A stretch of DNA of 56,177 nucleotides, the filler included, from Sluysia triapertura (lineage: Eukaryota), in assembly GCA_046118255.1 (NCBI GenBank). It is 4 parts of 4 records of this genome, joined end to end, with 100 filler letters (N's around TTAATTAATTAA, not from the genome) between each part and the next. Parts side by side here need not be neighbours in the genome. Positions count along the whole stretch, not along the records: positions 45,394 to 56,177 come from JBJNIA010193516.1; 3 more parts are not named here. The stretch is one strand, 5' to 3'. How positions within the stretch are numbered: position 1 is the first letter of the stretch; the number at the start of each line of letters is the position of its first letter. A program made the translations under genes and the position numbers. This document shows positions 6,695-56,177 of this stretch, piece by piece. The notes beneath the pieces were generated by a model, which did not search any database, was not told where the DNA came from, and saw only the letters and a program-made list of their open reading frames with translations.

Positions 6695-6932
6695 CCCTTT
6701 CAGCCCCGAATTTTTTTTCCTTAAGATATATGGTGATTTATTGTCTTTATAGATGATTTTTGCACAAATATGGCGGCGCTCTGATGCTACGTAATTACGT
6801 TCAAGGTAATCTTTATATCTGGAGGAAGCTAAAATTATGCTCTTCGTATTACTTTAGTAGGATCTTGTATAGCAGTTGTGTAAGAGAAAAAATCGCCATT
6901 GACACCATATGGCGGTCCCGGGGCTGAAAGGG
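6695..6932. mobile_element. piggyBac-type MITE
   Basis: Perfect 14-bp TIRs CCCTTTCAGCCCCG / CGGGGCTGAAAGGG flanked by TTAA on both sides (6691-6694, 6933-6936). Confidence 0.92.
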
Positions 6933-8485: not shown

Positions 8486-8778
8486 CCCCTTCCCTGTTTA
8501 TTCCTTATATTTGTGGGGTAACTAAAACTGACCAGAGCATAAAATCCCGTATACATACAGACCAAAGTGTAATCTTCATAATATTTATAAAACGACGTCG
8601 GAAATATCTTTATACACTACTTTTATTATTATTTAATATTACTTTGTACGTTTTATTACCATGTTTGTCTAGTTTTATTTGTTTTTCTATTCGGAAAAAG
8701 TATTTTGCCTTCGCATTTTCACTAAAAAATAGCCAGTTTTCGACTATTCACTTGAAAAATAAATAAACAAGGTGGGGG
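8486..8778. mobile_element. piggyBac-type MITE (second, older family)
   Basis: TTAA on both sides; imperfect TIRs CCCCTTCCCTGTTTATT vs reverse complement CCCCCACCTTGTTTATT (14/17). Confidence 0.8.
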
Positions 8779-11014: not shown

Positions 11015-12080
11015 ATTGTGGGCAAGCAACTTTACCTAATTTTTATTATAAAATATTGATCCAAATAAAATATTGATTTTAATCGGGTTCACCTATAGTT
11101 GATTATTTATAACCTTACTGGTGGATATTAAACATAATATAACAACTAAATTTTCGCGATTGTGAGTGTCTCTGACCACATTAAGATCTATAACTTTAAA
11201 AGAAAGTAATGTTAAATAATTAATTTAGACCATTGCAACAAAAAATTAATGCAAGTTTATATCACTAATAACAAAAAAATTCAAGTACTCGAATGTATAT
11301 TTTTGATGCAATAACCGCACATAGTAAAAGAATTAACAACTATGATTTGTATAAATGTGCTAATAATAATGATAGAATTGTAAATATTAAAACTTAAAAG
11401 TTTTAGACAACAATTAAACAACATTAATGAAATTGGAAAAATAAATTTTAATTATTTTTAATTAATTTTGGTTGATTGTAAATTAATTAAAAAGTACAAA
11501 ACTCTAAACTTTTTCAATTAATAAAATAGATTAAATTAAAGAGATAAAAAGAATCTAAAACTTTAAACTTTTCAATTAATAAAACAAATTATTCTAAATT
11601 AAAAAGATAAAAAGAGTCTAAAACTTTAAACTAAACAGATAAAAAATCTAAAAATTTAATTTTTAATAAAGATAAAATTAANNNNNNNNNNNNNNNNNNN
11701 NNNNNNNNNNNNNNNNNNNNNNNNNTTAATTAATTAANNNNNNNNNNNNNNNNNNNNNNNNNNNNNNNNNNNNNNNNNNNNATCAACCATCATTTAATCT
11801 TAAATAATTTACTTAAATTACTTCTCACATTAAAATAAGTATTGCTGGATTTTTATTAACATCTGAGCGAACCTAACTTATCCATCAAATTATTTTAAAT
11901 TCTAGGTTCACCTATAGTAAAAGACTTAAAACTTAGAGAAGGCTTTCCTACAGGATTTTATTAAACAAATATATTAATGATTTTTTTATATTAAATTAGT
12001 TAATTGAAAGTATTTATTTATTTTTGCTACAAAGTTTATTCTTTAAAGTTATTATTTTGTCACGATAATGTGAAACGTTA
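11015..12080 (+). repeat. Pair of diverged direct copies (about 11015-11200 and 11860-12080), probably alpha-related
   Basis: Shared 14-mer GGTTCACCTATAGT at 11086-11099 and 11905-11918 with colinear flanks (ACCTAA..ATCCA.. upstream, TATTAAACA..AATAT downstream). Confidence 0.65.
11682..11781. other. Scaffolding gap with artificial TTAATTAATTAA linker
   Basis: N44-TTAATTAATTAA-N44 (100 nt); identical construct at 26587-26686 and 45294-45393. Confidence 0.97.
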
Positions 12081-13709
12081 AAGTTATCAAATCTTAATGT
12101 ACACTTGAGATTTACTAAAAGAATCTTTTACTAATTCAAATGATAATTTGCTTTTTCTTTACTGTTATTTTATATATAATATTTACGAAGTTCAAATAAC
12201 CAAAATGAAAATACTAAATATCCTAATTAATATTTTTACAACAAAATGGGGGTAATATATAAAAATATGGCCAAAACAAAATTATATAATAATCAAACAA
12301 GTTTAAATAAATATTAAAAATATTTATAAAGTATAGTTTAATCGTGATTATGAAAGTATCTTTATGTCAGGCTAAAGTTTATAAAAGTTTATAATTACAC
12401 ACAATTAGATATAAAACAATTAGATGTAATTTGATTAATTTGTATTCTAAAAATATAATTTTAAACATTATGTTTAAATAAATCAATGTCATAAAGGGCA
12501 GCTAGCGAAAAATCTCTAATTTGGGACAAATCTTTAGCATCTTTTAAGTGATCCTCTATCCAAATATTATCGTTACAAGTTGAGGTTTGTTCTCAAACTA
12601 ATTCGCTTCCTATTATATGAATTTTTATTTTAAAATTATATCTTCTCATTTACAATTTTTAAAAATCGCTAAACTTCACTATTTCCTTGTTTTTTTAGTG
12701 ACAATGCAACAATATACTAATAATAATGATTTATTTGTAACTTTCAAATATTAAAATTACTAGTTTTGAATTGATTATATTATAAATTGTATTTTTACTT
12801 TTTTAAATTATATATTTTTCAAATATTATTAATTTAGAATTAAATATTTTACAAATTATGCACATTAAAAATTTTTAATAGTAAACTAACAAATAAATTG
12901 TTGCTTTTAGATCTATTAATCTGCAATTTTACACTTTACTGTTTTAATGCATATAAAATCATGAATCCGACCTTAGTTTTTTAGAATTTAGGCTATTTAG
13001 CCTACTTTATTATGGAAAACGTTAAAGGCCTTTATTCTCAAAGAAAAAATTTCATAAGCATTTAATATTCATTTCCAAATTCTCTTTCATGACAATCATC
13101 TCATTTTATTATTCTAAGTATGAAAAATTTAGGATTTAATATTTTGAGAATTAATTTAAATTTGATGGCTCAAAATAAGGTTTTCTTTATGTTAGATTTG
13201 TGTGTTTTAATATAAGTGTAAGTTTAAATTTTATGACTATTGTTTACTAACACTTATTACGATAAATTGGAGATGGAAGTTTAAACTTATTTGATTACTG
13301 TTAAAAAATTCGCGTCTTTTTCTTTTAACTAAAGTAAATGAAGCAAACTGAATTAACCAATAAATACTTTATTTATAAAATGTTATTAGCAAATACAAAG
13401 TTCGAATAATGAAATAATTACTTTGATTTTATAAAATTCTTTATGTAAAATTTTATCACATTTAATGTTATTCTGATTCAAAGTAAGAATATTTTTCAAA
13501 ATGAATCGTTTTATATTAACTTAATATATGAATATATATTGAACTTGAATAAACTGTGATTATATCTAATTCAGCCATCTATCTATACTCACGTTTTTCA
13601 TAGTGGTGATGATTTTTAGTTTTTTAATACAATGAAATTGCTTTTTTAATATTATTTTATTCATGTTATAGGTTGTTATTATTTAAAAGTATTTTCAAAA
13701 TTAAGTTAC

Positions 13710-13788
13710 ATTATATTTCCATAACAAAGTATTATATTTCCATAACAAAGTATTATATTTCCATAACAAAGTATTATATTTCCATAAC
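13710..13788. repeat. 21-bp tandem repeat, about 3.8 copies
   Basis: Unit ATTATATTTCCATAACAAAGT, exact copies. Confidence 0.95.
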
Positions 13789-14763
13789 GATGCATAAATA
13801 AATTAAATTTGAATTTTATTGTTTAATTCTATTCATTATTTTTCAGTTATTAAAATAATTGTATATAATGAATAATTTCTTTTGTTGTAATAATTTCATT
13901 AAACATTCTTTTGTATTAATTAAAATAAATCTGTTACTGCATTAATGGATTTATTTACATTTGAATTAATGATTTTACTATTTGTTTTCATTTAAATTTT
14001 AATTAAAACAATTATATTTACATAATTCTATTAAAATAATTTTTACATTTACACTTTTAAATTCTTATTAATTTAGTTACACTTAGTGGAACCACATCTT
14101 TATTGAAAGATCTTACTGAAACAAACTCATAGGCAGTCACAACTTTATCATAGTATTCTTCATTCAATCATTATGTATAAGATTTTAAATAATCTATTTT
14201 AGACTTAGTCCTACTTTGTGATTAAGAGTTTAATTAAGGTTCTAAATTTGGTTGGAGCTTCAAAAGATATTCAGAAGATTCTAGATGTTTTCACCTCATC
14301 ACAATCACTCCCTTTTCTACCTACCTATTCTAATTATTAATGTCTCAAATTTGTTTTTGCTATTAGTAGTAATTTTAAATGTTTTTTTCAATATTTTTCA
14401 AAACATTTTAAATGTATTCTTAAGTGCCCAAATGATGTTTTCATCTTCATTAATCTGTCTTTAATAATGTTTTATTGTGTATCTGTCCATTTCCGTGTCT
14501 ACTCTACCTATTCCAATATTAGGAGTACATGGATATGAGAGTAACTTTCATAAATAAAATTAATAAATTTTTTACAATTACAATAATTAAATTTGAAAGT
14601 TATCTTTATAAAATTTGTGAGTGTTTCATTTTTATTAAATTTTTACTTTTGAAATTTAAAACCAAGTATTACATTTATATTCGACTATTTAAATTAGAAT
14701 CTTAATTCTTAAGGAAGCAAATATGTAATTCAATGTTACACATGATTTTATTTTATAATTTAG

Positions 14764-15102
14764 CTTGTAAACGATTTGGTTCTTAACAACGATCTTGAAC
14801 ACTTATTATGTAAAGCTGAAAGTCTTTATCTTCAGTTGGAACAAATTTGGCCTCAAGTTCCGCAAGATATGAAATTAATTTTAGACTTCAGAAACTGTTC
14901 AAATAGTAAAAGTAATAAATATTGCCCAGTTTCTCCCACTGTTATATCTTCATCACCTGATAATGCAACATTACCAATAGAAAACATTACCAAAACGAAT
15001 CAGAGTTACACAGAATCTTCACACACTTCTTCTGTCAAACAATCTTTAAATGAATATGGTTCCATGGGTTTTGTGGTCCCTGATAATTTTTCATCAAATT
15101 GA
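14764..15102 (+). CDS. TBC1D15: Terminal exon of a TBC1D15/TBC1D17-like Rab GAP
   Basis: TTTAG acceptor, phase 0. LVNDLVLNNDLEHLLCKAESLYLQL matches HINELSMKIDVEDILCKAEAISLQM; Ser-rich tail, TGA stop, AATAAA just downstream. Upstream exons not found. Confidence 0.8.
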   Translation, partial: LVNDLVLNNDLEHLLCKAESLYLQLEQIWPQVPQDMKLILDFRNCSNSKSNKYCPVSPTVISSSPDNATLPIENITKTNQSYTESSHTSSVKQSLNEYGSMGFVVPDNFSSN

Positions 15103-15749
15103 ATGGAAAGAAAAATGATAAATAATAAATAATCGACACCTCAACTTCTTCACTTATTTATTGTTTAAACAGTATGAAATTGAATCAATTTCATTTATAA
15201 ATTTACATGTTTTAAATTTACAGTTATTTCATTATTTTATTAAATTATTTTATTATTACTTATACGTAGATTTCTTTGAAATATCTTTTATTTTTCTTTA
15301 ATAATATTAGAACCACTTAGCAAATCGAACTAATTTATTTCAAGATTTATGTAATTTATAAACATGAACTCAAATAAAATTTAGAATTGCAATGTGGTGA
15401 TAGTAACTTCAGTGTACTAAGTCTGAATTACCTTTTTTAGATTGATTGTATTTTAATTATAACTAAATTTTGATATTTGATTATGACAGTGTACAATTTA
15501 ATTGAGCGTTGATTTTACTACTAAAAAATTTTATTGATTTGAAATTAAAATAAAGCTTTAAAAGTTTTAATCTTTGGATTTTAAAATAATTGATCTTACC
15601 AATAAAGTTTTGTTGAAACCAACGATTTGTTTAATGTTTAATACATTTGAAATCAAATAATACTGATCATTCACTTAATACATTTAATGAAGCAATGGAA
15701 TTATTAAATAGAAATTGTTCGATTGAAATTTATCAAAAACTCATTTTAG

Positions 15750-16110
15750 CTGAGTACTATTTCCAATTAGTTCATCTTTATTCAAATACTTCTTTGAAGG
15801 AAAACAGTGTAAAGTATTTCGAAATTGGACTTACAGTTTGTACTCATACTACACATTTGTTATATTATCGTGTTATGTTTTACAGCAAAATAACAAATTT
15901 TGTTAATTCATTAAATTTAGTAACTTTGTTAATTTTTTTAATTGTTGCAGGCCTTAAGCCCATTTTGTTAAATATAGTACAAACACGTTTAAGTCGTTTT
16001 CGTTTAGTTGAAGTTTATTTAGTTAAAATAATGTATGATAAAAATCCAGAAACAATAAAAATAGCCTTAATTTTTATAAATTAAAATATTTTTTGCCATC
16101 CACACACATT
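15750..16110 (-). repeat. Alpha family copy overlapping the 145-aa plus-strand ORF 15647-16084
   Basis: 15860-16110 aligns with 51950-52190 (TTTTTAATTGTTxCxGGCCTTAAGCCC; GCCATCCACAC vs GCCCTCCACAC). The ORF N-terminus looks TPR/helical-repeat-like. Confidence 0.8.
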
Positions 16111-18096
16111 ATAAAATACATAATAAGATAAGTGATAGGTTATGTACCGTTTATGTTTCAAAAAAATACGTTTCAGAAATATTTAAGATAAATTTCTTTC
16201 TAATTAGAAATATCATATTAATATAAAATAGATATAAATATTAATAATAATAATAATTATTATTATTATAAATGAATAAATAAATATAAAATAACAACTT
16301 AAACATAACTTTTTTCAAAAAAAAAATTTTATAACATCATGTTGATACTATTCTTATCATTATTTATAATTTAAAATGACACGATAATATTTCTTATTAA
16401 ATTTTAATAACATTCAAAATTATAGCTGTAAGGCATTTAAGTAGTTTATAACTGTTTCAGGAAATTAAAATTGAAAAACAATCAAAGATTTTTACACCAA
16501 ATAAATGAAGTAATATATACACTATGTACTATGCACATTTTTATATAAACAAATGCTTTACATTTTATTCTGCTTTTATAATTGTTATAGTTATAATTAT
16601 TTACCATATTATTATGAATATTAATATATAACTCACAATTTATTAAGCATTATTTATTCATTCTTAAATTTTGATAGCTTCATTAATTATTTTCATAATC
16701 AACTGGGAATTATTATTTTAACTTAATATCGAAAATTGCTGTGCATTTTTTTTTGTTTTATTGTATTTATCTTAAAAACAAATCATATTTCATTAGTTTC
16801 ATGAATTAAAAGTGGTAAAATTATTTTACAAGTTGTCCCAAATCTAAAGATAACATATTTTACATTTTTCTCGGTCACTATAGCTTTCAAATAACAGTTC
16901 ATAATGTCAATATGTGATGTTGTCATTTTGAATACGATAAATCAAATTTCGGCTTAATTTTAGTGGTCGTTATGATAAACATTGCCTGAAAGTGGTTCCA
17001 AAACCTTTCATCCACCCACACAATGTTTTCCTACTTTGTATTTACATCATATTAATTATTATATACTCAAATTACAAATTTTATATTTACGCAAAATAAT
17101 ATTAATTTTTACACTTATTATAAAGTTGTTTATTTTCTTTGTTATTTATTTTTACTGTTTTATTTTCTTGACTTTTATTAATTTGATGAATTATACATGA
17201 ATATTGCGCTATTTCTTTCATAACTTTGCTCTTTTGACTAACTAAATTAGCAATATATCGTGTAAATTTGACAATTTCTTACATTTTGGTGTTATATGGG
17301 TGTTATGAATTTTGTTTGTGATGAATGATGTTTTGAAGGAAATTTTGATATTGAATTTTGAAATTTAATATTTATCTTTAGAGTAGAAGTTGGATTTGAG
17401 GACGTATTATTAATTTTATTACGAATGATAATACTAAGTGATATCTTAAGAATTATGAATGTATATGACGAATTTATCGGATAACTCTTTAAACTAAAGC
17501 TTAGTATTTGATCGCTGGATATATTTGGAAAGTATAAAATACACTTAAAATACACTGGTATAAAATACACTATAAAGTATAAAGTACTTAGTACACATCA
17601 TATTCTAAAGATCAAATCAATAAACATCTTAAAATTAATCATTTATAAATAGTTAAATATTTTATTAATTCTCTAATATTATATTTTATTAATTCATTTT
17701 AATAGTCAAATATTTTAATCGGAAAATTATAATTTTTGTTTCGGAAAATTTAATAAAAATTTCAATCATCTTCCAGGTTAGAATTTTATTATTACTAAAT
17801 AAACAGATGGTCACATGCAGAAACTCAATGATGATTTAAGATGGTATCTGTTACAAAAATCAAATAACAAAACTGTCATTAAATAAAATAATAAATTAAG
17901 ATAAAATTTAATTTTTTACTAAGAGTGTAAGTATGTACCAAGCAATAAAATTAAAATTAAAACCACTTATGGTTTTTAATTTGATAAAAACAAAGTTTAG
18001 AACTGAAAATGAGTGTATGAATTAAAGTATATTTTTAGTATATTAATTTTCAAAAAATTAATACCATCTTAACAAAAATGACCTACAAGTGACATG

Positions 18097-18285
18097 TGTG
18101 GTGGTCAACCCAACACTTTAAGAATATTATTCCATTAAGACACAATAAAATCATCCTTCAGAATGTTCACAATTGTTATTATCATCAAACATTTTAAACG
18201 TAAAATTTCACAACAGCAAAATCTTATACATCGGAAATCATCAATCATATACTTAAAAATCAAATTAAAACATTTTAAAATTAAT
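18097..18285 (+). repeat. Dispersed C/A-rich repeat starting TGTGGTGGYCAACC (short copy)
   Basis: Aligns with 46080-46275 (CATCAAACATTTTAAAC, TTCACAACAG, TCAAATTAAAACATTTTAAAA). Confidence 0.8.
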
Positions 18286-18644
18286 CCCCTGGGATCTATA
18301 TTTTATTGAATTATTTTGAGATTGATTTATAGTGAATTATAATTAATTGTTATAAACCATGATTTATATTGTTACATACTCTGTGATGCAGTCGGAATAT
18401 ATTGAGATTCAGACTCATTTAATTGTGTTGCGTAATTGTCGTTAACTTAAAAATTTAAACTCACAACACTCAACATAAAATAGATCCTAATAAGTAACCA
18501 TCTCTTAACTTTCACAATAACTGAATCGAATTTCCTGTTTTCTTAGCAATTATCTAAGCACCATATAAAGAACCACATTTTACTGTCATTTAACACAAAT
18601 CACAAATAATGTAATAAATAATAAACTGTTGCAATGCCTTTAAA

Positions 18645-18775
18645 TAATGATAGTGTAATTGACTATAATAAAACAAAATTGTTAGACGGGGCTGATAATA
18701 CAGTGGATAGAGCATTGAACTGTTCAACGAGGTGCCGGGTTCGATTCCGTTTAGTCCATTTTATGAAGTCTAACA
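18645..18775 (+). repeat. tRNA-derived repeat / pseudo-tRNA (Asn-like) within an inverted-repeat-flanked module
   Basis: 18689-18758: acceptor-like GGGCTGA/TTAGTCC, A-box-like CAGTGGATAGAGC, B-box GGTTCGATTCC, CTGTT loop; D and anticodon stems are broken. Related copies at 18909-18995, 23373-23485, 24020-24077 and possibly 4460-4520 (-). Confidence 0.7.
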
Positions 18776-19812
18776 TTTGGTGAGCTCACATATCGAATAC
18801 CCTTATGATGTGGAATTAGATGATTTACAAGATGGTTGAGGTCAAACCTAATTGAATTTTGTGGAGATTTGTTGGGATAAAGGCCTAAAGTGCCATTTAG
18901 AATAATACTAGTGTAATTGACTATAATAAAACAAAATTGTTCAGTGATCAGAGCATCCAACTGAGCAGCGACAGGGCCCGATTAGTCCATTTTATATTTC
19001 ATTTCATATTTAAATATTCGTATTATTAATAAAGATGCAATTATGGCAAATGTGCACCATAATAGCAGAAAATTGATATCAATGTGTAATCCTGACACTT
19101 GACATTACACCGTCATTTATTCAGATTGATGCCGCATTTCCTTCACGGTCGGCAGGTTGGCTTCTTCTGTCAATAATCGGAAAATGGAGGAACTTCATAT
19201 TTGACTCCTAAATTAGCGAGACTGGCATCATCTCGAATAAAAATGGAATTTATAACTCACATTAATTATTTAGCATTGCTGAAATAATGCTATCCTTGTT
19301 TCTTTCTACTTTAACAGAAAATACATCTATCTGAATAGAGATTGGTTGATTTCCCATTTTCGAAAAACCAATGTTTGATTAAAATCACAAAACATTGAGT
19401 TGACAAAAGATTTATTTTTACAATAAATGTGTCAAACTTGCAATATTGAATTGTTTAATATTTCCAAAAAAAGTTTATTCACGTGACATTCTAAAAATAG
19501 AAATAAATTTTTTTCGGTCATAAATGATTTTGTTTTGCTGATTCTGGAACAATTACAAATAACAAATAGAATATTTTAAATGTCGTCTAATAAACCATCT
19601 ATTTTAATATTTTAAGTCAAGATTTTACGTTATTGATACTAATACTTTAAAGGGTCAAATTTAGTATAAATTTAAACTACTTTCTAATATCAGTAGCAAA
19701 AATTTATTTAAATATATAATACGTTATTACAGACATTTTAAAATTACTAAAATAGAGATTTTTTTGGAAATATTAAGCATTTAATATTATGTTACATGTT
19801 TGTCTGTTATTT

Positions 19813-45255: not shown

Positions 45256-45611
45256 CTCCGCTCATGGACCCCATATCTTTCTGCATACGATTTNNNNNNN
45301 NNNNNNNNNNNNNNNNNNNNNNNNNNNNNNNNNNNNNTTAATTAATTAANNNNNNNNNNNNNNNNNNNNNNNNNNNNNNNNNNNNNNNNNNNNAGGTTGT
45401 GATTGTTTGACAATGACCTTGTAGTGCTAAGAAACCAATTTTATTAATTGGCAGTATTTCTGATGTCCTATTTATAACAATTTGACATTTTTGGATTTTA
45501 TAAGAATTAAATATTCGATGGAAAACGATTTTCGTCAAAAATCTTAGCAATTCCTAGACCTTTTACTACATTTTCCCTTTTTATAATAGAGTTGAAAATA
45601 TTTAATTCGAA

Positions 45612-45836
45612 ATGAATAACGTAGAAAATAAGAGAAAATGGTTTGGAAATAAATACTTGAAAATCAATGAAGAAACGTCAGCATTTATAATCATCGGTAA
45701 TAAAAATAGCGACAATACAAAAACAAGTGAAACAAAGTTAATTGTATGTGATAAGATACCAGATACGAAACTAAATATAGGATGTTATATGGATTCAAAA
45801 ATAAACATGGAAGAAAATATTAATTGTGTAAAATAA
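45612..45836 (+). mobile_element. LINE (CR1/L2-like) reverse transcriptase C-terminal fragment
   Basis: KWFGNKYLKINEETSAFIIIG..NIGCYMDSKINMEENIN matches WxxxNxLKLNxxKTExIxxG..NLGVxxDxxLxxxxHI. Confidence 0.75.
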
Positions 45837-46079
45837 AATACATAATATTCATTTATCATTTTTGCTCATTTTTTCATTTTAAATAATAATTTAAATAGTA
45901 ATTTATCAATTTTAATTCTTCATTATTAACTAGTCTTAAAATAATTTATCATTGTTAATAAAATAAACTCATTTTAATAAAACATTGTTTAAGAATAATT
46001 AAGATTATAATGCTATTACATATAGTTAATATAAATTCAAAATTAAGCAGCAGATAATAATTAAATTTAAAGAGAAAAT

Positions 46080-46680
46080 TGTGGTGGCCAACCTATTACT
46101 TTAGCAAATTTTATTTTATCAATACATAACAAAATCACTCTTCATAATATTTCACAACTCTTAATACCATCAAACATTTTAAACATAAAAATTCACAACA
46201 GTAAAATCATATTCGATATCGAAAATAATCAATCATGCACTTAACAAAATCAAATTAAAACATTTTAAAAATAATTCAACATATTACACTTTTTATAACA
46301 TTTAACTGTTCTTTTCATCAAAATCTTATTCTAACATTTTCAAAACATTTCTATTTTGTAACCTAATAACATTGAAAATCACATTTTCACTTTCAGATCA
46401 ATAACAGACATTTAATAATTCATTAAAAACATTTTATTCATAGTTCCATAACAGTAAAATCATAATCTGTTAACATCTTACAACTACCTTTAGAATCTAT
46501 CGAAATCGTTGCTATATTTTATTTCTTTCAGATCCACGAAAATCATTTTTCACATCCCAAAACATTTTATGCATTATCTAATAATATTAAAATCACAATT
46601 ACACCGTAAAACTTTGAACACACGTCTTAAAATCAATCCAAAACATTACAAGCTTACAATCTTTTAAAACTCAGTCACTG
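46080..46680 (+). repeat. Dispersed C/A-rich repeat starting TGTGGTGGCCAACC (long copy, LTR-like start)
   Basis: Same 5' end as 18097 (+) and 55131 (-); strong strand asymmetry with almost no G. Confidence 0.8.
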
Positions 46681-46827
46681 AAAAAAACTTAATTTAAAGA
46701 TATTAAGTTAATAGAATTGTATTTTTAATCATTTTTAAGGAATTTAAATATGTTTAGAAACAGAATAAGTAAAAGGAAGATATTGTTTTGAGTATATTAA
46801 AAAGGATTTATGCTTTAACTTTATTTC

Positions 46828-46891
<64 letters not shown>

Positions 46892-47083
46892 TAATGTTAT
46901 TATTTTATTGTTATCAGGATTATTATTAATACCTCAACATTGGTACATTGATTTTGAATTCTATTCTTGATTTTATTGGAAACTAATGTAATTCTTTAAG
47001 ATAAGGTGTACATGAGATCTTCTTCCAACTTGGAGAATTAGTGTCGATGCTTGATTAATTATTAATTGTAATTATTTATTTAG

Positions 47084-47174
47084 AGACAAAATGAAAAATA
47101 CGAATTCGATAAAGCTTACGACAAGTTATTGAGTATAGAGAAACAATATTATCAAGGTACAACAGATCTTAAGA
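47084..47174 (+). CDS. Exon of a long coiled-coil protein (laminin alpha domain I-like)
   Basis: TTTAG..GTAAGT; RQNEKYEFDKAYDKLLSIEKQYYQGTTDLK; ends phase 1, matching the next exon. Confidence 0.75.
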
Positions 47175-47872
47175 GTAAGTGAAATTATAAATTTTTTTAT
47201 AAATCATGTTTGTTCGACATTCTTTTTTGTATGAATTGACTAAGACATTTTTATGGAATTTCATCGAACTATTAATGGAAACATTTTCAAAGAGTTTGTC
47301 ATGGTTTATATTTTCTGAAAAGAAATTCTTACATCTCATTCTAATAATTAAAAATTCTTTTTGTTTACAAATATTGAATTAAGTAAATGAAGTTTATTAT
47401 TTTCTGACTTATTGTTTAATATTATAGTATCATTTCTCCTAATTTTACAATCTGTTTTTATTGTATATTGGCACTTTTATTCTATGTAGTGACCCAATAA
47501 TTATACCATCGTTTTAAAAGTACACAGTCATACGATGGTAATGTCTTTCAATTAGTTTTAATATTTAATGCATCGTTCAAGTGAAAAGAATAAAGCCAAT
47601 AAAACACACGTGAAATGAATGTCTAGAAAATCTTTATATATTCGATATTTATTGTTTTATCTTAACATAAATTATATATGTGTAATAATGCAAACCTGTT
47701 AGCTTTTTTTCTGTCTTCAAATTTGACACATTACCAGAAACATTAGGTTATTATTAAGGTATTGTAATCTATATTTCAATAAGTGGTATAACATTATTCA
47801 ATTATTAAATTTATCCCTTAATCTATAAAAAAATTATAAAATTTACAAAAAATGAATTTAATTTTTATTCAG

Positions 47873-48026
47873 AAGCTTCAGTTGAAGCTAAAAGTGCAAT
47901 GTCTTCATCACATTCGCAGATAAAAGACATGAACAATGCTATTCGAGATGCTCAACAAAATTTAACAATAATTCAAATGATTACTAAAGATGTTCTGAAT
48001 GATAATCGAGCTGACAATTTAACTAG
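47873..48026 (+). CDS. Exon of the same coiled-coil protein
   Basis: TTCAG..GTAAAG; ASVEAKSAMSSSHSQIKDMNNAIRDAQQNL..; phases 1 to 2 consistent. Confidence 0.8.
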
Positions 48027-48942
48027 GTAAAGTTGAATTTTAAAGCTTGAAGATGATGCTATTTTTGATCAATTTCGATTTAATATTGTATTGAAACAAT
48101 AAAATCTTGTTATAATAGTTTCGGTTTATCGAGAATTAAACTCATCCAGTGCAGGTCTCATGATAAGATGCAAAATGAAAATTTAGATTTTCAATCAATT
48201 TTCTTATGAAAATATCCATATTCCTTTTATAAATATGAATAATTCAATCAGAATTGATTTAATAAATTATTTTTTCATTTTGAAAGCAGAAAACTACAAA
48301 AAATGTTACTTAGTGACGGGGTGGATTGTCACATTAGTGAAAGTTTTAGTAATATTGAATATTGTTTCATGATAAACTTGACAAACTACATCAACTTTAT
48401 ATTACTTATTAATTTTATTTATTACATAAAGTATACATATTTTATAATTTTCATTTAAATCTGATTGCAATATGAATAGAAAAACTAAATTTTTTTTACA
48501 TAATTACCAACTTTATAGCTTAATATTGCTAATGTCAACAATTTACATATCTTACATCTCTCATCGTCCGGATGCTATATTTGTTTTAATATCTTTAATA
48601 ATTCTTCATATACTTTCAATATTGTAAATAGCCATCATTGACAGTTCATTGATGTTCATGTCTTCATTCGTCATTTTCGTCACAACTGCGGACAAATATA
48701 AATCTTTCAGATTTGTTTTTTAACACTAATGCATTTATGACTACATTTATACATAATTCAGTAATGGCACGAAAAACGCCGTACTTGTGCTATATTTAGT
48801 AATCGTAATCTTTTACAAATGTTAATTTAAAGAAAATATAATTTTGTCTGTACATTGACAGAGTTTTAAATCAGTCATTATTTTCCATTGCAATTAATAA
48901 ATAATCTTTTTATTGTACATTTTAGTAATTATAAATTTTTAG

Positions 48943-49132
48943 CACTGTTAATGAACACATCAAAACTTGGAATGAATATAAACGAAGAGTGGATTCTTCA
49001 ATCAACACTTCTATCACCAATCAATTAAATCATGCTATTAAACAATTAGAATTGGCCAATAAAATTAAACAAGATGATTCAAAAATTTATAGAAATTTGA
49101 ATAATTATATTCAAACAAAAGAAATCGAACTT
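48943..49132 (+). CDS. Exon of the same coiled-coil protein
   Basis: TTTTTAG acceptor, phase 2; TVNEHIKTWNEYKRRVD..LNHAIKQLELANKIK; probable GTTGGT donor, phase 0. Confidence 0.75.
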
Positions 49133-50330
49133 GTTGGTTTTATTTATTTATTGCTTTTTGAAATTTATAAAAGTTTAACCTTTTATTGTACATTGTTAAT
49201 TTTTAACTTTATACGATTTATATATTTGTGTGTTATTTTATTTTTGAGGCTCTTGACGAGACCCGTTCTTGGAGGAAAGATAAAAGTGAAATTTAAAACG
49301 TATAAGAAATATTTCTTGACAAAAAGCTTCTCAAATCGTTAGATAAATGATACGAAATAGGTGAGATTATTGATAAACATACCAAAGCTACAATGTACAG
49401 TTTAATTTTAAAACGATATTTTAAAATTTTTATCAAGTAACGAGAATAGATTGAAGCAATATTTCGATTAGTTAATGTTATTGTAATTAAATTCGTTAAA
49501 TTTATTTGATGGAAGTTTTTTAAATAAATTTTATCAAAATCTTTTAGATCATTGTAAAATGAATGTAATTTATATTTATTAATTACAATTATACGATCTT
49601 TAAAATATAAGTTGTAAGATTTGAAATCAAAATAATTCTTATTTAATATCAAACAATAAGGATAATATATAAGGCATTTATTAATATGTAATTTAAGGCC
49701 GAGAATAAATAAAAGGTTTAAAACATAAATAAAATTCAACTAAAAACGAATAGTAAATAAAATCAAAATTTCGTATTTGACATAAACTCAATGAATCTTC
49801 ATTTACAGTCATAAATAGCGATCATCAATGAATTCGATCGAATCCAGTCGAGGAATGAACACCCGATTGAAATGGTTCTAACAATTTGAAACAACGAATT
49901 TATGTGTATGAATTGATAAAAGATATTGAATATCGTGCATGTGTTTTGTTAACTTGTAGTGTTATTATAAAGAAATGATGCTTTAAAAGTTGTTGAGAAT
50001 TCAGAGATATGATCGTATTATAAATTGCAATAATTCTTGAGACGTATGTGAATTATGGATAAATAAATTTTTATGTTAACAACATTATTTAAGGTTGAAT
50101 TACAAAGTTTCAAATTAAGTATAATATTAATTAAGGAAATATTCTTATTAAAACGTTTACTAACATTAATCTGTCTTAATATTGAACGCATAAAAATTAA
50201 ATGATAAAATTTCCTTATTGTGTATTATTGATTACAGAAATAATTTTATTAATAAAATTCTTGGTACTTATAATAACAAGTTTTCATCTTTACGATAGAA
50301 AGACTTTTATTTCCTATCATTGTACAACAG
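49133..50330. repeat. Intronic cluster of alpha copies (about 49133-49340 minus, 49340-49900 plus, 49960-50330 plus)
   Basis: PVLGGKI vs PIFGGKL (26219 ORF); TTTAAGGCC at 49692; GAATCTTCATT and AATTCGATC shared with the 1060 copy; AAATGATGCT near 49973. Confidence 0.55.
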
Positions 50331-50634
50331 TATTATTATCAATCAATAACTCAGTCACTGTCATTATATTGTTTGGTATCCTAAAAACTTTATTGGATCT
50401 TAATGTGGATGAATAAAATTTCTAAAACATCATTTACATTTTAAAAATCGCTTTATAATTCCAAAAATTAAATTAATATAACTAAACAATAATGAAATAT
50501 TTTCGAATAATCTAATATATATTAAAACAAAAATTCAAAGAAGTCTATTTTTGAATATATACACAAATTTTGTAGAGTGCTCTAACTTTGTAACCACTAT
50601 TATCAATAATTACTGTAATTATTACTTAATTCAG

Positions 50635-51104
50635 CTGATAATAAATAGAACTATGGAAATCAATGCTGATATATTGCTGAAGTTTCACAAAGCTGATGTA
50701 GCATTAGGCGAGGAAAATAAAAAGAACAAAAACGACATTACAACGTTACTTAGACTTCAATCAGAGTTGAACGAAAAAGTGAATAATTTACAATCTTCAT
50801 TGGATTTAGTAAAACTTAAAATTGTTACTAAATACCAAATGATGTCGAATTTAATACGATTATGAAAATTAAAACCATTGAAAATAGTATTAGGTTATTG
50901 AAAAACGACACTGATTTTTTAAACCGTGCAAGTGATGCTAAAGAAGTCTACGCAACAATAGAACAAAATATAAAAGAGGTGGAAGAAATAATTAAAGACT
51001 TGGAACAAAAACTTTCACTTATAAAGCCTAAAGTAAATGAAGTTGAACAATATGATAAAGAAATTAGACGACAGATCTTCGGATCCTCCTTCACCAGCTC
51101 CTGA
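50635..51104 (+). CDS. Exon of the same laminin-alpha-like protein with an apparent 1-nt frameshift near 50830
   Basis: TTCAG acceptor, phase 0; heptad-rich; DFLNRASDAKEVYATIEQNIKEVE recalls the laminin alpha domain I/II boundary. One extra A in TAAATACC joins the two ORFs. Confidence 0.6.
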
Positions 51105-51276
51105 CATTCCTGAAATTATAAAATATACAAAAATTTATTAATTAAATAATATGTAAATGATTAAAAATAAAAATAATCAATTTTGTTATAGCAGTAATGA
51201 TTAGATGCTATTATTGATATGAAGGTCGTATATTACTAAATTCTCTATTAGTATAATATTCATTGTAGTATTTAAC

Positions 51277-52269
51277 ATGTTATTTGAGTTAGTACATTCA
51301 AAAATGATGGATTTGGTCATTATGTGGTCTATATTAATATTACTCACAAATTTCCATGAACGCCTTTTTGCTAATACAAAATGTAGAATGGACAATTTAC
51401 ACGAAATTGACTTTAGTATGAATACGTTTGAATTAACAATGTATTGTTATTTATTTTCAAATCCGTGCTATAGTGCAGTTCGTTTTCATGTTGCTGATAA
51501 TGGTATAAAATGTGGAAGCAATTATAGCAAAACAATTTATCCTGGATTAATGTTAACGTCTGGATTAGTACATTACGTTCTCGACATGTTATCAATATCA
51601 GTTCATATCAAAGAAGTCTACATGTTTATGAGACCCATTTTTAGTTCTTTTACTGTTTTGATGACAATTTTATTAACTAAAGAAATGTGGAATGATAATG
51701 CTGGTTATGTTGCTGCCTATCTCATAGCAATTGCTCCTGGTTATTTAAGTCGAAGTACATCTGGAAGTGATGACAATGAAAATGTAGCTATCTTTGCTCT
51801 GCTATTAACATTTTATTTATGGACTAAGACTTTTAAATCTGATCATGTATTTTGGGCAGTTTTGTGTTCATTGGGTTATGTTTACGTGGTATCTGCATGG
51901 TGTGATTATGTTTTATTTGAAATGGTTATTTCATTTCTATTTTTATTCTTATATTTATTATATTATTATGCGTATGTTTTGTTCTTTGTATCAACAAATC
52001 TTGTCAAATTAAAGTTATTCAATACTTGTTTGTTTTTAATTGTTTCGGGCCTTAAGCCCTTGTTTGTTAATTTAAAAATGAGGTTAATAAATTGTTGTTT
52101 GTTAAAAATAACTTTTAGTAAATTAAAAAATAAAATAAAAACGAAGTTTTTTAAGTTAAAAAATGTTTGGCCCTCCACACTTCAATCTAAAAGAATCGTT
52201 AGTAGAACTTCTCGACTTCGTTGTATTTTCGGATTCGGTAAAGTTGATAAGCACAACATTGCTCACTGA
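51277..52269 (+). pseudogene. STT3: Intronless, truncated, degenerate STT3 oligosaccharyltransferase copy
   Basis: TIYPGLMLTS..IAIAPGYLSRSTSGSDDNENVAIFALLLTFYLW..VSAWCDYV (about 51532-51912) is clearly STT3. GSYDNEG has become GSDDNEN and WGGY has become WCDY; the C-terminal WWDYG domain is absent. Confidence 0.85.
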
Positions 52270-52300
52270 TGGCACTTTAAAAAATGACGAATCACCATGT
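51915..52300 (-). repeat. Alpha family copy forming the 3' part of the STT3 ORF
   Basis: TGGCCCT, CGTTAGTAGAAC, AGCACAAC and CACCATGTT match the reverse complement of 55511-55625 in order; GGGC-CTTAA-GCCC at 52047-52059. Confidence 0.75.
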
Positions 52301-52728
52301 TTATCGGTCTTGCTTGATGTTCCATGTGGTGTTATGTAATGTTATGTATTAATTAAAAGTTTTAATTTTATTATATTACTGTGAAAATATGCTTTTACGA
52401 ATTGTAATAACAATAAATCTTTAATATATTTATTATTATTTATTAGAAGTTTGGTAACATTATAAAACACAAAATTAGATACATAAGTTTTATTAGGATT
52501 ACTTAAAAGATAAACATTTAGTTTTAATGTTCTTATTTTGATTATGCCATCCCGAACTTGTTTTCGATTAACTTCGCAGAAGATTCTAATGAAAATAAAA
52601 TAATGTAAATAGATTTTAATGTCACTAATAAAGTTAATAATCAAGTTAAAGTTAACAATTACTTTTAAGTCATGATCATTGTTACTACCGAATGGCCTTG
52701 TGTCAATGATGATATCAATTGCTTTATT

Positions 52729-53880
52729 CTATTGATATGATCCACTAAGTTCGAAGTCCAAGAGATGTCGTTTGAGAATTCGGTTGCATTGTGTACATAC
52801 CGACAGTCGTGATTTATTATCTAAGTCTGATCGAATTAATGGCATCATGTTAGTATCAAGTTGAATGCTATTCTCTCTTAGAAAATATTTTTGCTTAATC
52901 TCTGGTGCTCCTAATAATTTCAATGGTTCGTGTCGACACGTTTGTAACTGACTATGTAGAATTACTTTTTAACAAAATGAAGTCAACTTGTAGAAATTTC
53001 AATGTCATATTCATCTTATTTTTATTGAACAAGTAACACATAATAAATAAGTTGTTATTATTGAACTTTAAGCGTTTGTAACTACTTTCTAACTCTTTTT
53101 CATTATAAATAATTAGTCTTAAAAGTGTAGTTCTTAGAGCATCATTTTTCTGCAAATCTAAATAAAAGACACAAAATCGTTTTTTCTCAGTTTCAAAGTT
53201 ATTTCCTGCAAAACAAATACAAAGACCTAAATTTACTTCAAACATTTATGTTTTTCATTAATAACTTTACTTATTTCTGCCAAAATACATTTATCATTAA
53301 TATTTTTACTAAATAAATATAAAGACTTAAATTTATTTCAAACTTTCGCTTAAATGTATCACTTTCATGATTATCATTAATGTTTATTACCCCATCTACT
53401 TTTTGTTTAATATCAGATAAGATTCCTTCAACGTGGGAATCGCATTGTTCCAAAATTCTTCTAAAAAATTTGAAATATCGTAAAATTCTTAAATAATTTT
53501 CTTGAATTCGATCAGCGCTGATTCCAACAAAACACATACTATTATTTTCTAAATCTTTAAAACCGCCCAAGCAATCGTATATAAAATCATCTTGATCTGA
53601 AATTAAAGAGTTAATAGTTTAATCACGTCTTTCGGCATTTATTTTCCAATCTTTTGTAAAAAGAACTTGTGCTTTGTCAACATCAGAATAGTTATTCCAA
53701 CATTTTCTTTATCTTTAATTTCGGCATTTGTTAATTCTGAAAGAGCTTCTAATCTAAGTAAATTAAATTCGTTGAATATTTTGTAATCTTATGAAACATC
53801 ACATCTTTAAAATCGGTTGTCTTATTGTGTTTTTTTACTATTAGACTATCCATTTAATAAATCTCGATTGTTGCTAACAA
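52729..53880 (-). pseudogene. TRNT1: Intronless CCA tRNA nucleotidyltransferase pseudogene
   Basis: RDLLNG; FTKDWKINAERRD*TINS with a stop at 53619-53621; GFKDLEN..FVG..RIQENYLRILRYF (EDxxR motif D to N). Weaker similarity continues through TLL..RLK and ..SGSYQ. Confidence 0.88.
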
Positions 53881-54559
53881 GCTAATATAAGACGAATATA
53901 CGATATCAATGAGTGAATAATACAAAACAGAATGATGTAATTTTTATGAAACACCACAAATGATTAAGCCAATAAATGATTATAAACTATTAAATTGTGG
54001 CAATTAATTGTAAAAAATTTCTAATTACTATAAAACACAGAATAACTGTAATAATAGACTGTTGCATTGTATAGTAAACTGTTAACTGCATTAATAAATT
54101 TGATGATAATTCTTTTTACTACTATGAGTGGCCGCCCAATCAAAACACGAAAAGCAAATAATATTGATAATTTCAATTGTGCAGTCACCAAAATAATCAG
54201 ATATATTGATAGATCATAAATGTAATGAGCTGTCATAAGTCGACAGTTAGTAAAGCAAAATTAATTGATTAAAATTACCTGTCGATTGATGGCAAGTTAA
54301 CTAATAAACAACTTTTTGTGTGTTGAATAAATAACCACTATCAGTAGTGACATTAAACTATAATTGTGAATTAATGATGTCACCACTGGTAGTGGTAGTT
54401 ACACAGTTGATAAATAAATAAAATAATTATTTAAAATAATGAAAAATAAAAATGATAATAGTAATAATAATATAAAATTTATTAAAATGAAAAATTAAAA
54501 TGGTAAAGTATTAATTAAAAAACAAATCTTTTATTAATTCTTTTATTTCTTGACATATT

Positions 54560-55131
54560 TGAAATTCTTGAACTTAATGTCTCTAAATGTCTAAAAGGTT
54601 AAATGTTAGGATATTATGTTAGGATAATTATGTTACCAATTAATGCCACGCATTTTCAATGAAATTTAACTGTGTAGTTGTGATTCTAATGTTATAAGAT
54701 GTGTAAAAGGTTTTAAACGAATTTTTAAATGCTATTTAATGGTTTTAACTGAAGATAAGTTTGGGTGTTGAAAACTTGTGACTTAAGTGTTTTGAGATAA
54801 AATATAAATGTTTTATGTGAAGTTTTAAATATATATTGATGTTTTGAATGAAAGTAATGTTTGGATGTTAGAAAATTGTGATTTTAAAATGTATTGTAAA
54901 GAGAATGGTTTAGTGGATGTGAAGAAGGTAAATTATAGCTTAGGTTTTGGTACATTCTAAAAAGGTAATTGTGTGATGTTGAAAAATATGATTAAGATTA
55001 TGTTGACATGAGATTATATGTAGAAATGTTTTTAATGAATCTTTAAAATGTATATTGTAGATTTTGAATGTGAGTGTGGTTTTATGTGGTGGCATGATAA
55101 AATTTATAACAGTAATAGGTTGGCCACCACA
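54560..55131 (-). repeat. Dispersed C/A-rich repeat starting TGTGGTGGCCAACC (minus copy)
   Basis: TGTGGTGGCCAACCTATTACT identical to 46080-46100. Confidence 0.75.
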
Positions 55132-55510
55132 TTCCAGGTGAAGAGAGAGGTGTTGATAATGTATCATAAGGAATAGAATCATAAATATTGTGAAGAATGA
55201 TGATATCATCGGTGGCATTGACATTGTAAAACAAAGACATAAATCACATTGTTTTATTATTTGAATTAACATAATTTATATTATTTAACATTTATTTTAT
55301 TATTTGAATTAAATTACATATATTCATTTTAGTATATTATTTATAGACTGTGTTTTATTAAATTATTTATTTTTATTAAATCGAAGAAATAAAACTAAAA
55401 TTAATTTAATTAGATAAAATAAAATAAATTTAAACTAAAATTAAACATTTAAATTTTTATTAAATTAAAATTAAATATTTACTTTGTTTAAATGAATTGT
55501 TTGCTTAAAT

Positions 55511-56177
55511 GAATATGGCGACCGTGAATTTTGTATCTGAGAGAAGTGATGCTAATAGAATAAAAGAAGTTAAGTATGTGAGTCCACCAACGTAATGGAT
55601 TTACCTGCTAGGGCCAGTCGTTGGATTTCTATAAGATTTAAAAAGGTTAACGAAATAACTTAATGCAAGCCTAAAGGCTTAATAAATTGAACTCTGGAGG
55701 TATTCTGAAAAACAAATTTAAATGAGTAATTTAAATAGTATTTTTCGTAAAATCCTATAAAAGGATTCGTAATAAATGTATTTTTCGTGGTCAGAATTAA
55801 ATTCTGACGAAATCTTTGATGTACGTGTAGATTTTTGATTTTAAAGCTATAAAAATTAATATAAAATAACAAAATATTTTTGTTTTGCAAGTTATATTAT
55901 TCAAAATTTATACAAAAATTCTTTAAAGAATATAATACAAATAAAATAATTATGTTGATCAATAATAAAATAATAAAGTCAATACTTTATCTTATGCAAA
56001 AATTTTTAGAAAACGTATTTTTCGTTGGAATCGTTAAAAGATTTCACAATATTATTAAAATAGTTTAAGTTATATTTTTCTAAGATACACGAGGGTATCG
56101 ATCCTTATACAAAATAAACTAACGATAAGTTATTCTAAAATAGTTTAAAATCAATCCGTGATTGTCTCGCGAAGAGG
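55511..56177 (+). repeat. Dispersed 'alpha' family element, long copy
   Basis: GAAGTGATGCT 55543-55553, ATGTGAGTCC 55576-55585, AGGGCCAGTCGT 55610-55621; colinear with 1-665; several perfect hairpins. Confidence 0.8.

What the first reader, a model, noticed from the sequence alone, without database searches (positions are those of the whole stretch)
51200..52300. STT3 core bracketed by inward-facing alpha copies in one uninterrupted 330-aa ORF
Seen: a well-preserved STT3 segment (51532-51912) is flanked by a probable plus copy (51200-51530; GATGCTA, ATGTGGTC, AATCCGTG) and a clear minus copy (51915-52300). The flanks still carry faint STT3 signal at the right spacing (RLF..HEID..N vs RLF..HEFD..N; VSGLKP vs VGFQP; KLKNKI vs YLRSKL), so they look like both STT3 and alpha. 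Known: Pack-MULEs and Helitrons capture gene fragments but normally give sharp junctions. Inference: gene capture between long inverted arms, patchwork conversion by the family, or an artificial blend.
Basis: partly seen in the sequence, partly recalled or inferred. Interest (0 to 1): 0.75.

Follow-up and report, generated by a model that had tools for sequence, protein, structure and literature searches.

The report
Amplified truncated STT3B-derived reading frame
A 330-codon open frame derived from the front third of the STT3B glycosylation-enzyme gene, lacking the catalytic half and present as hundreds of near-copies in its AT-rich host genome; it is a gene-derived repeat, not a gene trapped between inverted transposon arms.

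Summary
The ORF (51277-52269, +) is real and exceptional: 348 stop-free codons where the other five frames carry 20-38 stops.

The "alpha arms" are not confirmed. The two flanks are not inverted copies of each other and match nothing else in the piece. They carry weak in-register STT3 signal (aa 19-50 and 214-240); beyond aa 240 nothing is demonstrable.

No STT3 C-terminal half (EL5, WWDYG) exists in the ORF or the piece, and about 11 near-invariant residues are replaced. It cannot be an oligosaccharyltransferase.

New: in the only public run holding this DNA, summed contig depth over 51288-52175 is 2,000-18,800 against about 20 for single-copy flanks. That implies roughly 100-900 copy equivalents, not explained by low complexity. 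Some members carry canonical STT3 codons directly upstream of 51532, so that breakpoint is real. Variants between copies look neutral (8 non-synonymous, 2 synonymous), yet neutral decay from STT3B would leave the frame open with P about 1e-7.

Best reading: one copy of a mosaic, STT3B-derived repeat family whose source copy was kept open by selection. Organism, expression and element type remain unknown.

The parts
51277..52269 (+). 330-codon ORF (ATG to TGA); the frame is open from 51223
   Evidence: There are 0 stops in this frame against 20-38 in the other five. The next longest stop-free run in the piece is 148 codons.
51334..51426 (+). aa 20-50: weakly STT3-like (TM1, RLF, HE.D; the first acidic residue D45 at 51409 is kept)
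   Evidence: HMMER alignments reach aa 19-20. DNA identity is 39.6% at the expected register, joint second of 338 offsets. AF2 pLDDT is 83-91 for aa 1-30.
51427..51531 (+). aa 51-85: occupies the place of STT3 external loop 1 but has no demonstrable similarity; near-invariant G63, D72, W76, P78, R81 and G84 are all replaced
   Evidence: AF2 pLDDT is 46-71. Other family members break away here (loose end at 51532).
51532..51915 (+). aa 86-213: STT3B core (TM2 to about TM5, DNE motif at 51772-51780)
   Evidence: It is 58% identical to the best STT3B found and 66% at DNA level to L001. Codon-position bias is significant (p 2e-4). Near-invariant residues are changed at C115Y, A162S, G189D and G209C.
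51916..51996 (+). aa 214-240: weaker continuation of STT3 in the same register; the DNA is TAT/TTA-rich simple sequence
   Evidence: DNA identity is 48.1% at the core's offset, joint best of 341 offsets. HMMER alignments run to aa 240. Hydropathy correlation has a local peak of r 0.57 at the core register.
51997..52269 (+). aa 241-330: open frame with no demonstrable STT3 or other protein similarity
   Evidence: AF2 pLDDT is 40-60.
52119..52165 (+). A-rich tract inside the ORF, near the right end of the high-copy zone
   Evidence: It is a possible poly(A) remnant, which is inference only.
51288..52175 (.). Zone of very high summed contig depth in run X1 (2,000-18,800 against about 20 for near-exact single-copy contigs); limits are good to about +/-55 bases
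   Evidence: Depth is not explained by low complexity.

Best explanation
The ORF is one member of a high-copy repeat family of roughly 0.9 kb, with about 100-900 copy equivalents. The family descends from a contiguous, intron-free stretch of an STT3B coding sequence, roughly human STT3B residues 79-296 (TM1 to about TM6).

It is not an oligosaccharyltransferase. External loop 5 and the whole C-terminal domain with WWDYG are missing, and external loop 1 is destroyed.

The sharp steps in STT3 identity at 51532 and 51915 are real. They are not junctions with inverted transposon arms. The flanks are a much more decayed, partly replaced continuation of the same frame. The left step is a mosaic breakpoint of the kind made by recombination or gene conversion between family members of different age.

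What is shown: STT3B origin, truncation, loss of conserved residues, high copy number, absence of arms, and the breakpoint at 51532.

What is inferred:
- The copies themselves drift neutrally.
- The long open frame is inherited from a source copy that was kept open by selection, that is, translated.
- Spread was by a mobile-element route (retroposition or transduplication) that I could not identify.
For: -
- No other STT3 segment exists in the 10.8-kb piece.
- Conserved residues are lost: 7 of 11 near-invariant columns in the left flank and 4 of 19 in the core.
- Copy number: 1,158 contigs of run X1 lie on 3.3 kb, and 618 of them are only 90-95% alike. Summed depth is 2,000-18,800 over 51288-52175, against 17-22 for near-exact flanking contigs. 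Only 3% of what was laid runs on into unlike sequence, so most members are collinear with this copy, flanks included. Depth is highest where sequence complexity is highest.
- Breakpoint: three contigs match from 51532 onward but carry codons for LGRIVRG just upstream, the canonical STT3 sequence.
- No arms were found.
- The sequence is collinear with the coding sequence across places where other taxa appear to have introns: before VYPGLM and after SAWGG, inferred from intron read-through in fragmentary database proteins.
- Neutral drift between copies: 8 of the 10 listed majority variants are non-synonymous. The neutral expectation is 27% synonymous, and omega of 0.3 or less is rejected at p 0.02.
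- Selected source copy: simulated neutral decay from an AT-rich STT3B coding sequence to the observed identities leaves no stop with P 0.018 (left), 0.013 (core) and 0.0007 (right). Composition shuffles give 3.5e-4, 5e-5 and below 5e-5.
Against: - Copy number rests on one run of unitigs from a coded, unknown organism. That run may be the very sample the window was assembled from.
- No other copy could be fetched. Family consensus, element ends, target-site duplications and the share of intact ORFs are therefore all unknown.
- The flanks show no codon-position bias (p 0.76 and 0.26).
- On their own the flanks have no significant STT3 similarity, so part of them may never have been STT3.
- The variant sample is 10 sites chosen by the tool.
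- The scan covers very many windows, so a chance long ORF is unlikely but not excluded.
- No transposon protein, terminal repeat or convincing target-site duplication was found.
Confidence: 0.5

Rival explanations
1. A living, lineage-specific multi-copy gene family. It would encode a truncated, fast-evolving STT3B paralogue: a 6-7-helix ER membrane protein without catalytic capacity, perhaps a decoy or partner of the OST complex. It would be translated from this and many other copies.
For: - The frame is open far beyond neutral expectation.
- The register is kept in multiples of three across the decayed parts.
- D45 and the D166-N-E168 motif are kept.
- The AF2 model, guided by an STT3 alignment, gives the STT3 helix bundle with TM-score 0.58-0.68 to solved STT3 chains.
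Against: - Variants between copies look neutral.
- The flanks show no codon-position bias.
- The last 30 or so codons lie outside the repeated unit, and part of the frame is simple TAT- or A-rich sequence.
- No related protein above 58% identity exists among 15 billion predicted proteins.
- There are no RNA data.
- The structure match is circular, because the alignment used was made of STT3 proteins.
Confidence: 0.22
2. A DNA-level fragment of an STT3B gene copy. The core would be an exon (about 51528-51909) and the flanks would be pieces of its introns, duplicated or captured and then amplified. The flank ORF and the faint STT3 signal would be chance.
For: - Both core limits lie within 1-2 codons of intron positions inferred in other taxa: before VYPGLM in vertebrate-like fragments and after SAWGG(Y) in several fragments.
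- An AG stands at 51526-51527 and a GT at 51910-51911.
- The flanks lack codon-position bias and the right flank starts with TAT-type simple sequence.
- The flanks alone show no STT3 similarity.
Against: - Aa 214-240 give their best DNA identity exactly at the core's register, so coding homology runs on past the supposed donor site.
- Aa 19-50 are weakly STT3-like at the expected register.
- Other members of the family carry uninterrupted coding sequence across 51532.
- Both flanks staying open in the core's frame has P about 1e-4 to 1e-8 by chance.
Confidence: 0.12
3. One reading: a gene fragment captured between inverted copies of a repeat, as in Pack-MULE-like or foldback elements. This could be at 51200-52300, or on the larger scale of the true inverted pair 45880-46475 / 54766-55343 that encloses the ORF.
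For: - A genuine inverted pair exists in the piece: about 70% identity over about 550 aligned bases, z 10.8, with mirrored GC skew.
- It encloses 8.3 kb holding three gene-like fragments: coiled-coil ORFs, the STT3 ORF and a TRNT1 pseudogene piece.
- Those fragments are multi-copy in the run.
Against: - There is no inverted similarity at the ORF's own flanks.
- The high-copy unit is only about 0.9 kb and stops within the ORF region. It is not co-extensive with the 9.5-kb structure.
- The outer pair is old (70% identity), and no target-site duplication or transposase was found.
- Two independent insertions of one repeat would look the same.
Confidence: 0.1
4. Assembly chimera: a repeat-rich region in which reads from different family members were joined wrongly at 51532 and/or 51915.
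For: The region is a high-copy family with many breakpoints: 192 loose ends were reported, three of them at 51532.
Against: - A contig with one difference spans 51887-52056, across the right junction. Another, exact, spans 51163-51308.
- Only 3% of laid sequence runs on unlike.
- 62% of sampled words of the stretch are present in the run.
- The run may be the assembly's own sample, so this is weak independent support.
Confidence: 0.04

Closest known systems
Eukaryotic STT3B, catalytic subunit of oligosaccharyltransferase (Pfam PF02516; human STT3B in PDB 6s7t)
   Same: Aa 20-240 align with human STT3B residues 79-296 (E 4e-46). This beats STT3A (1.5e-38) and yeast Stt3 (2.6e-28). The core is 55-58% identical to nematode, vertebrate and an unnamed AT-rich metagenomic STT3B. 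D45 and the DNE motif are kept.
   Different: Only the first third of the protein is present. EL5 (SVSEHQP), WWDYG and the rest of the C-terminal domain are missing. External loop 1 is unrecognisable. Eleven near-invariant residues are replaced. It is multi-copy rather than a single housekeeping gene.
Transduplicated host-gene fragments in DNA transposons (Pack-MULEs, CACTA, Helitrons such as the bat Helitron carrying NUBPL); own knowledge plus titles listed
   Same: A fragment of a housekeeping gene is amplified to high copy number. It sits next to fragments of other genes (the TRNT1 piece) that are also multi-copy.
   Different: No terminal inverted repeats, Helitron ends or target-site duplication were found. 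The fragment is collinear with coding sequence rather than carrying introns. An intact 330-codon frame is unusual for such passengers.
Processed retrocopies / retropseudogene swarms made by LINE machinery (own knowledge)
   Same: The unit is intron-free and collinear with the coding sequence, dispersed, and of mRNA-like size. An A-rich tract lies at its right end.
   Different: It holds the 5' third of the coding sequence, not the 3' end expected of LINE-made copies. The A-rich tract lies inside the ORF. Candidate target-site duplications are at chance level.
Ampliconic chimeric gene families built from pieces of housekeeping genes, for example Stellate/Su(Ste) from CK2-beta and the Dox family (own knowledge; a Dox-family preprint is listed)
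   Same: A truncated derivative of an essential gene with an open frame is kept in very many young copies.
   Different: There is no evidence here for tandem arrays, sex or B-chromosome linkage, small RNAs or meiotic drive. Only one copy lies in the 10.8-kb piece.

Membership tests
Functional STT3 (OST catalytic subunit) | N-terminal multi-pass STT3 domain (PF02516) | tested here: met
   E 4.6e-35, but only profile positions 72-245 of 405.
Functional STT3 (OST catalytic subunit) | External loop 1 with the first acidic motif and its conserved surround (HEFDPxFNYR ... WFD ... WYPLGR) | tested here: not met
   E43 and D45 are kept. P46, G63, D72, W76, P78, R81 and G84 are replaced. AF2 pLDDT is 46-71 there.
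Functional STT3 (OST catalytic subunit) | Second acidic motif D-x-E (DNE) | tested here: met
   D166-N167-E168 at 51772-51780.
Functional STT3 (OST catalytic subunit) | External loop 5 (SVSEHQP) and C-terminal domain with WWDYG | tested here: not met
   The ORF ends before them. tblastn with 30+ full-length STT3 proteins finds nothing outside 51286-51933 in the piece.
Pack-MULE-like or other TIR-bounded transduplicate | Terminal inverted repeats bracketing the captured fragment | tested here: not met
   Left flank against the reverse complement of the right flank gives z -0.6. No inverted pair lies within 51100-52400.
Pack-MULE-like or other TIR-bounded transduplicate | Target-site duplication at the element ends | tested here: inconclusive
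   Only 10-11-base matches with one mismatch in AT-rich DNA, four of them, which is chance level. Element ends are known only to about +/-55 bases.
Helitron carrying a gene fragment | 5' TC, 3' hairpin plus CTRR, insertion between A and T | not tested
   Element ends could not be defined without other copies. The only G+C-rich palindrome lies at 52045-52060, with a family breakpoint at 52059. There is no Helitron protein in the piece.
Processed (LINE-mediated) retrocopy | Collinear with mRNA, no introns | tested here: met
   The alignment to coding sequence is continuous from aa 19 to 240, across two places where other taxa appear to have introns. The parent gene's own structure is unknown.
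Processed (LINE-mediated) retrocopy | Includes the 3' end of the parent mRNA followed by poly(A) | tested here: not met
   Only the 5' third of the coding sequence is present. The A-rich tract at 52119-52165 is inside the ORF.
   There is no significant match to any other part of the piece on either strand. The motifs do not co-occur elsewhere. Copies outside the piece are masked and could not be tested.

The most novel reading that the evidence does not exclude
An animal genome carries hundreds of young copies of a translated, catalytically dead STT3B front half. This would be a selfish or regulatory 'decoy' membrane protein family derived from the N-glycosylation enzyme. Its frame would be held open by selection while its sequence diversifies.
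Probability: 0.2. Interest if true: 0.7.

Novelty: new member of a known kind. Interest (0 to 1): 0.42.

Why it matters
Amplified fragments of housekeeping genes are known, but an STT3-derived family has not turned up in my searches of proteins or papers. The 330-codon frame has survived heavy divergence, which is not what passive passengers of transposons usually look like.

If the frame is translated, it would be a new multi-copy membrane-protein family born from the core N-glycosylation enzyme. If it is not, it is a clean example of mosaic decay and conversion inside a gene-derived repeat.

For genome annotation, such copies will be mis-called as STT3 genes.

Tried and rejected
- **Inverted arms at the ORF.** Repeat finder, self-BLAST and Smith-Waterman with shuffles found none.
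They do not co-occur elsewhere in the piece.
- **Three AT-rich palindromic stretches** (49399-49741, 55229-55539, 55706-55996) as candidate alpha. They are not significant against dinucleotide shuffles.
- **Repeat-induced point mutation.** The indices do not fit (TpA/ApT 0.86, substrate index 1.2). CpG observed/expected is about 1, so there is no sign of methylation-driven decay either.
- **Ciliate genetic code.** It does not change the ORF, and an in-frame TAA sits at a hydrophobic position in the TRNT1 piece, which reads best as a pseudogene.
- **Transposon or other protein domains** in the flanks and neighbouring ORFs: none.
- **Fetching other copies or the organism:**
  - The exact protein is not on record.
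  - The word search gave only 4 distant fragments.
  - The full protein search gave only ordinary STT3, with best identity 57-58%.
  - Two metagenome scans were empty.
  - The run's organism is coded.
- **Taxon.** Cluster names point to nematode STT3 among the top hits and some nematode-like residues (LMLTSG, A/S-PGY), but identity is equally low to vertebrates, so no taxon is claimed.
- **Rfam:** nothing.
- **Literature:** no STT3-derived repeat found.
- **Target-site duplications:** chance level.
- **The coiled-coil ORFs upstream** could not be named.

Full report
**Setting.** The piece (45394-56177) is eukaryotic DNA of about 24% G+C with CpG at expectation. Its organism is unknown to me. 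The only public run that holds it is coded and kept as short contigs.

**The observation.** The reading frame is real. It runs from ATG 51277 to TGA 52269, 330 codons, and is open from 51223, 348 codons. The other five frames over the same span carry 20-38 stops. The next longest stop-free run in the whole piece is 148 codons.

The STT3 identity is solid:
- Pfam PF02516 gives E 4.6e-35.
- Human STT3B residues 79-296 give E 4e-46, ahead of STT3A (1.5e-38) and yeast Stt3 (2.6e-28).
- A search of 1.84 billion representative proteins finds 1,141 STT3 relatives and nothing else.

tblastn matches of more than 30 STT3 proteins start at 51532, 51526 or 51514 and end at 51912 or 51915.

'Well preserved' is relative. 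The core is only 55-58% identical to any STT3B found. Four near-invariant residues are changed: C115Y, A162S, G189D and G209C.

**The flanks are not inverted repeat copies.**
- The left flank against the reverse complement of the right flank scores below shuffles.
- Neither flank matches any other part of the piece on either strand.
- The one exception is a TAT-microsatellite match of the right flank with 46828-46928.
- Neither flank hits any Pfam family on its own, on either strand.

Copies in the masked parts of the window could not be checked.

**What the flanks are.**
- Tested alone against an STT3 profile, the left flank is marginal (105/2000 shuffles) and the right is null.
- Free local DNA alignment to an AT-rich STT3B coding sequence (L001, 28% G+C) finds nothing in either flank, while the core scores z 72.
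- Tests that ask only about the expected register are more sensitive. With the core fixed, the true left flank adds 4.8 bits (11/1000) and the right 4.4 bits (75/1000).
- Ungapped DNA identity to L001 is 39.6% for aa 19-50 at the expected offset, joint second of 338 offsets.
- It is 48.1% for aa 214-240 at the core's own offset, joint best of 341. The background is 30-33%.
- Aa 51-85 and 241-330 show nothing.

So the STT3-derived stretch is continuous and in frame from about aa 19 to 240 (51331-51996), with far heavier decay outside the core. The last 90 codons are of unknown origin. They include TAT-rich and A-rich simple sequence. The flanks lack codon-position bias (p 0.76 and 0.26), whereas the core has it (p 2e-4).

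**It cannot be the enzyme.**
- External loop 1 is unrecognisable: 7 of 11 near-invariant columns are replaced.
- The frame ends before external loop 5.
- No C-terminal domain with WWDYG exists anywhere in the piece.
- D45 and D166-N-E168 survive.
- An AlphaFold model guided by an STT3 alignment gives the STT3 helix bundle (TM-score 0.58-0.68 to solved STT3 chains). Confidence is high in TM1 and the core and low in loop 1 and beyond aa 250. This is expected given the alignment and is not independent evidence.

**The new fact: it is a repeat family.** Laying the contigs of run X1 on 50400-53700 placed 1,158 contigs: 208 at 99% or more, 332 at 95-99% and 618 at 90-95%.
- Near-exact contigs in unique flanks have depth 17-22.
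- The summed depth is 33-123 up to 51287, apart from one AT-rich bin (51066-51176) at about 1,040. It then rises to 2,000-18,800 from 51288 to 52175 and falls to 175-700 after it.
- Depth is highest where sequence complexity is highest, so simple sequence does not explain it.
- Only 3% of what was laid runs on into unlike sequence, so most members share this copy's arrangement, flanks included.
- That implies very roughly 100-900 copy equivalents of a unit of about 0.9 kb.
- Differences between copies are mostly G>A and C>T.
- Three contigs match from 51532 rightward but read codons for LGRIVRG just before it, the canonical STT3 sequence. The left step in identity is therefore a true breakpoint between family variants, not a gradient.
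- A contig with one difference bridges 51887-52056.

Caveats: this is one run, possibly the assembly's own sample, and contigs rather than reads.

**Selection.** Of the ten majority variants the tool lists inside the ORF, eight change the amino acid. That fits neutrality (27% synonymous expected) and rejects omega of 0.3 or less at p 0.02. Copies therefore seem to drift.

A copy 5% away from its source would still be stop-free with P about 0.14, because 3.9% of random changes make stops. One open copy among hundreds is therefore unremarkable, provided the source was open.

The source is the puzzle. Simulated neutral decay from L001's coding sequence to the observed identities leaves no stop with P 0.018 (left), 0.013 (core) and 0.0007 (right). 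Composition shuffles give similar or smaller values. I therefore infer that the lineage leading to the family was kept open by selection for much of its divergence. Whether anything is translated today is untested, because no RNA run was found.

**How it spread.** The unit crosses, without interruption, two places where fragmentary database proteins from other taxa show intron read-through: before VYPGLM and after SAWGG. This suggests a coding-sequence (mRNA) origin.

An A-rich tract (52119-52165) lies at its right end. Against a classical LINE-made retrocopy:
- It is the 5' third of the gene.
- The tract is inside the ORF.
- Candidate target-site duplications are at chance level.

No terminal repeats, Helitron features or transposon proteins were found. 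The route is unresolved.

The coincidence of both core limits with intron positions keeps alive a rival in which the core is an exon and the flanks are intron pieces. The in-register signal past 51915 and the uninterrupted coding sequence in other members argue against it.

**Surroundings.**
- A true inverted pair of a roughly 1-kb repeat (45880-46475 against 55343-54766, 70% identity, z 10.8, mirrored GC skew) encloses 8.3 kb that contains the ORF.
- Downstream on the minus strand lies a TRNT1-like piece (E 1.5e-13 to human TRNT1). It has an in-frame TAA inside the conserved RRD-x-TIN block, and it is also at raised depth.
- Upstream are unnamed coiled-coil ORFs.
- The region thus looks like a patch of multi-copy gene fragments.

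**Verdict.**
- Observation: partly confirmed. The ORF, the core and a partial faint flank signal are confirmed; the alpha arms are not.
- Interpretation: partly supported. Family patchwork is plausible; capture between arms and artificial blend are not supported.
- Best reading (0.5): a catalytically dead, STT3B-derived, mosaic repeat unit whose open frame is inherited from a selected source.
- Main rival (0.22): a living multi-copy gene family.
- Interest is moderate. The class (amplified host-gene fragments) is known; an STT3-derived family with a preserved 330-codon frame is a new member, and its status is testable once the genome's other copies and RNA data are at hand.

Noticed in passing
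window 45880-46475 (to about 46916) and 54766-55343 (from about 54408): A genuine inverted pair of a roughly 1-kb repeat: about 70% identity over about 550 aligned bases, z 10.8 against dinucleotide shuffles. The GC skew is strongly mirrored (-0.6 and +0.6). Each copy ends inward in TAT/ATA simple sequence. Both translate to a shared peptide (CGGQPIT.xNFI). The pair encloses 8.3 kb including the STT3 ORF.
   Followed up: partly
window 53274-53740, minus strand: A TRNT1 (CCA-adding enzyme)-like fragment matching human TRNT1 residues 113-194 (E 1.5e-13). It has an in-frame TAA at 53621 inside the conserved RRD-x-TINS block, so it is probably a pseudogene piece. Run depth there is 700-2,400, so it too is multi-copy.
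   Followed up: partly
window 47809-48027, 48935-49120, 50640-51101, plus strand: A series of coiled-coil-like open frames ending about 170 bases before the STT3 ORF. There is no Pfam or PDB identity beyond generic coiled-coil noise. Depth is 33-111, that is 2-5 copies.
   Followed up: partly
window 46828-46928: A (TAT)33 microsatellite at the inner end of the left copy of the 1-kb repeat. Similar TAT-rich sequence opens the right flank of the STT3 ORF (51920-51975) and reads as Leu/Phe/Tyr codons.
   Followed up: yes
window 49296-49739, minus strand: A 148-codon stop-free run with no similarity to anything. It is longer than composition predicts for this piece (expected number about 0.003), like several other runs of 110-135 codons.
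   Followed up: no
window 52378->51803 and 53503->50484 (joints in run X1): Contigs that jump backwards between these places with 20-27 foreign letters between. Other loci in the genome therefore carry the same modules in a different order.
   Followed up: no
L001 (JGI metagenome 3300033543, contig of 1,386 bases): An unnamed, AT-rich (28% G+C) STT3B with at least 363 codons in one exon. It is the closest sequence to the core (58% protein, 66% DNA). Its organism is unknown.
   Followed up: partly
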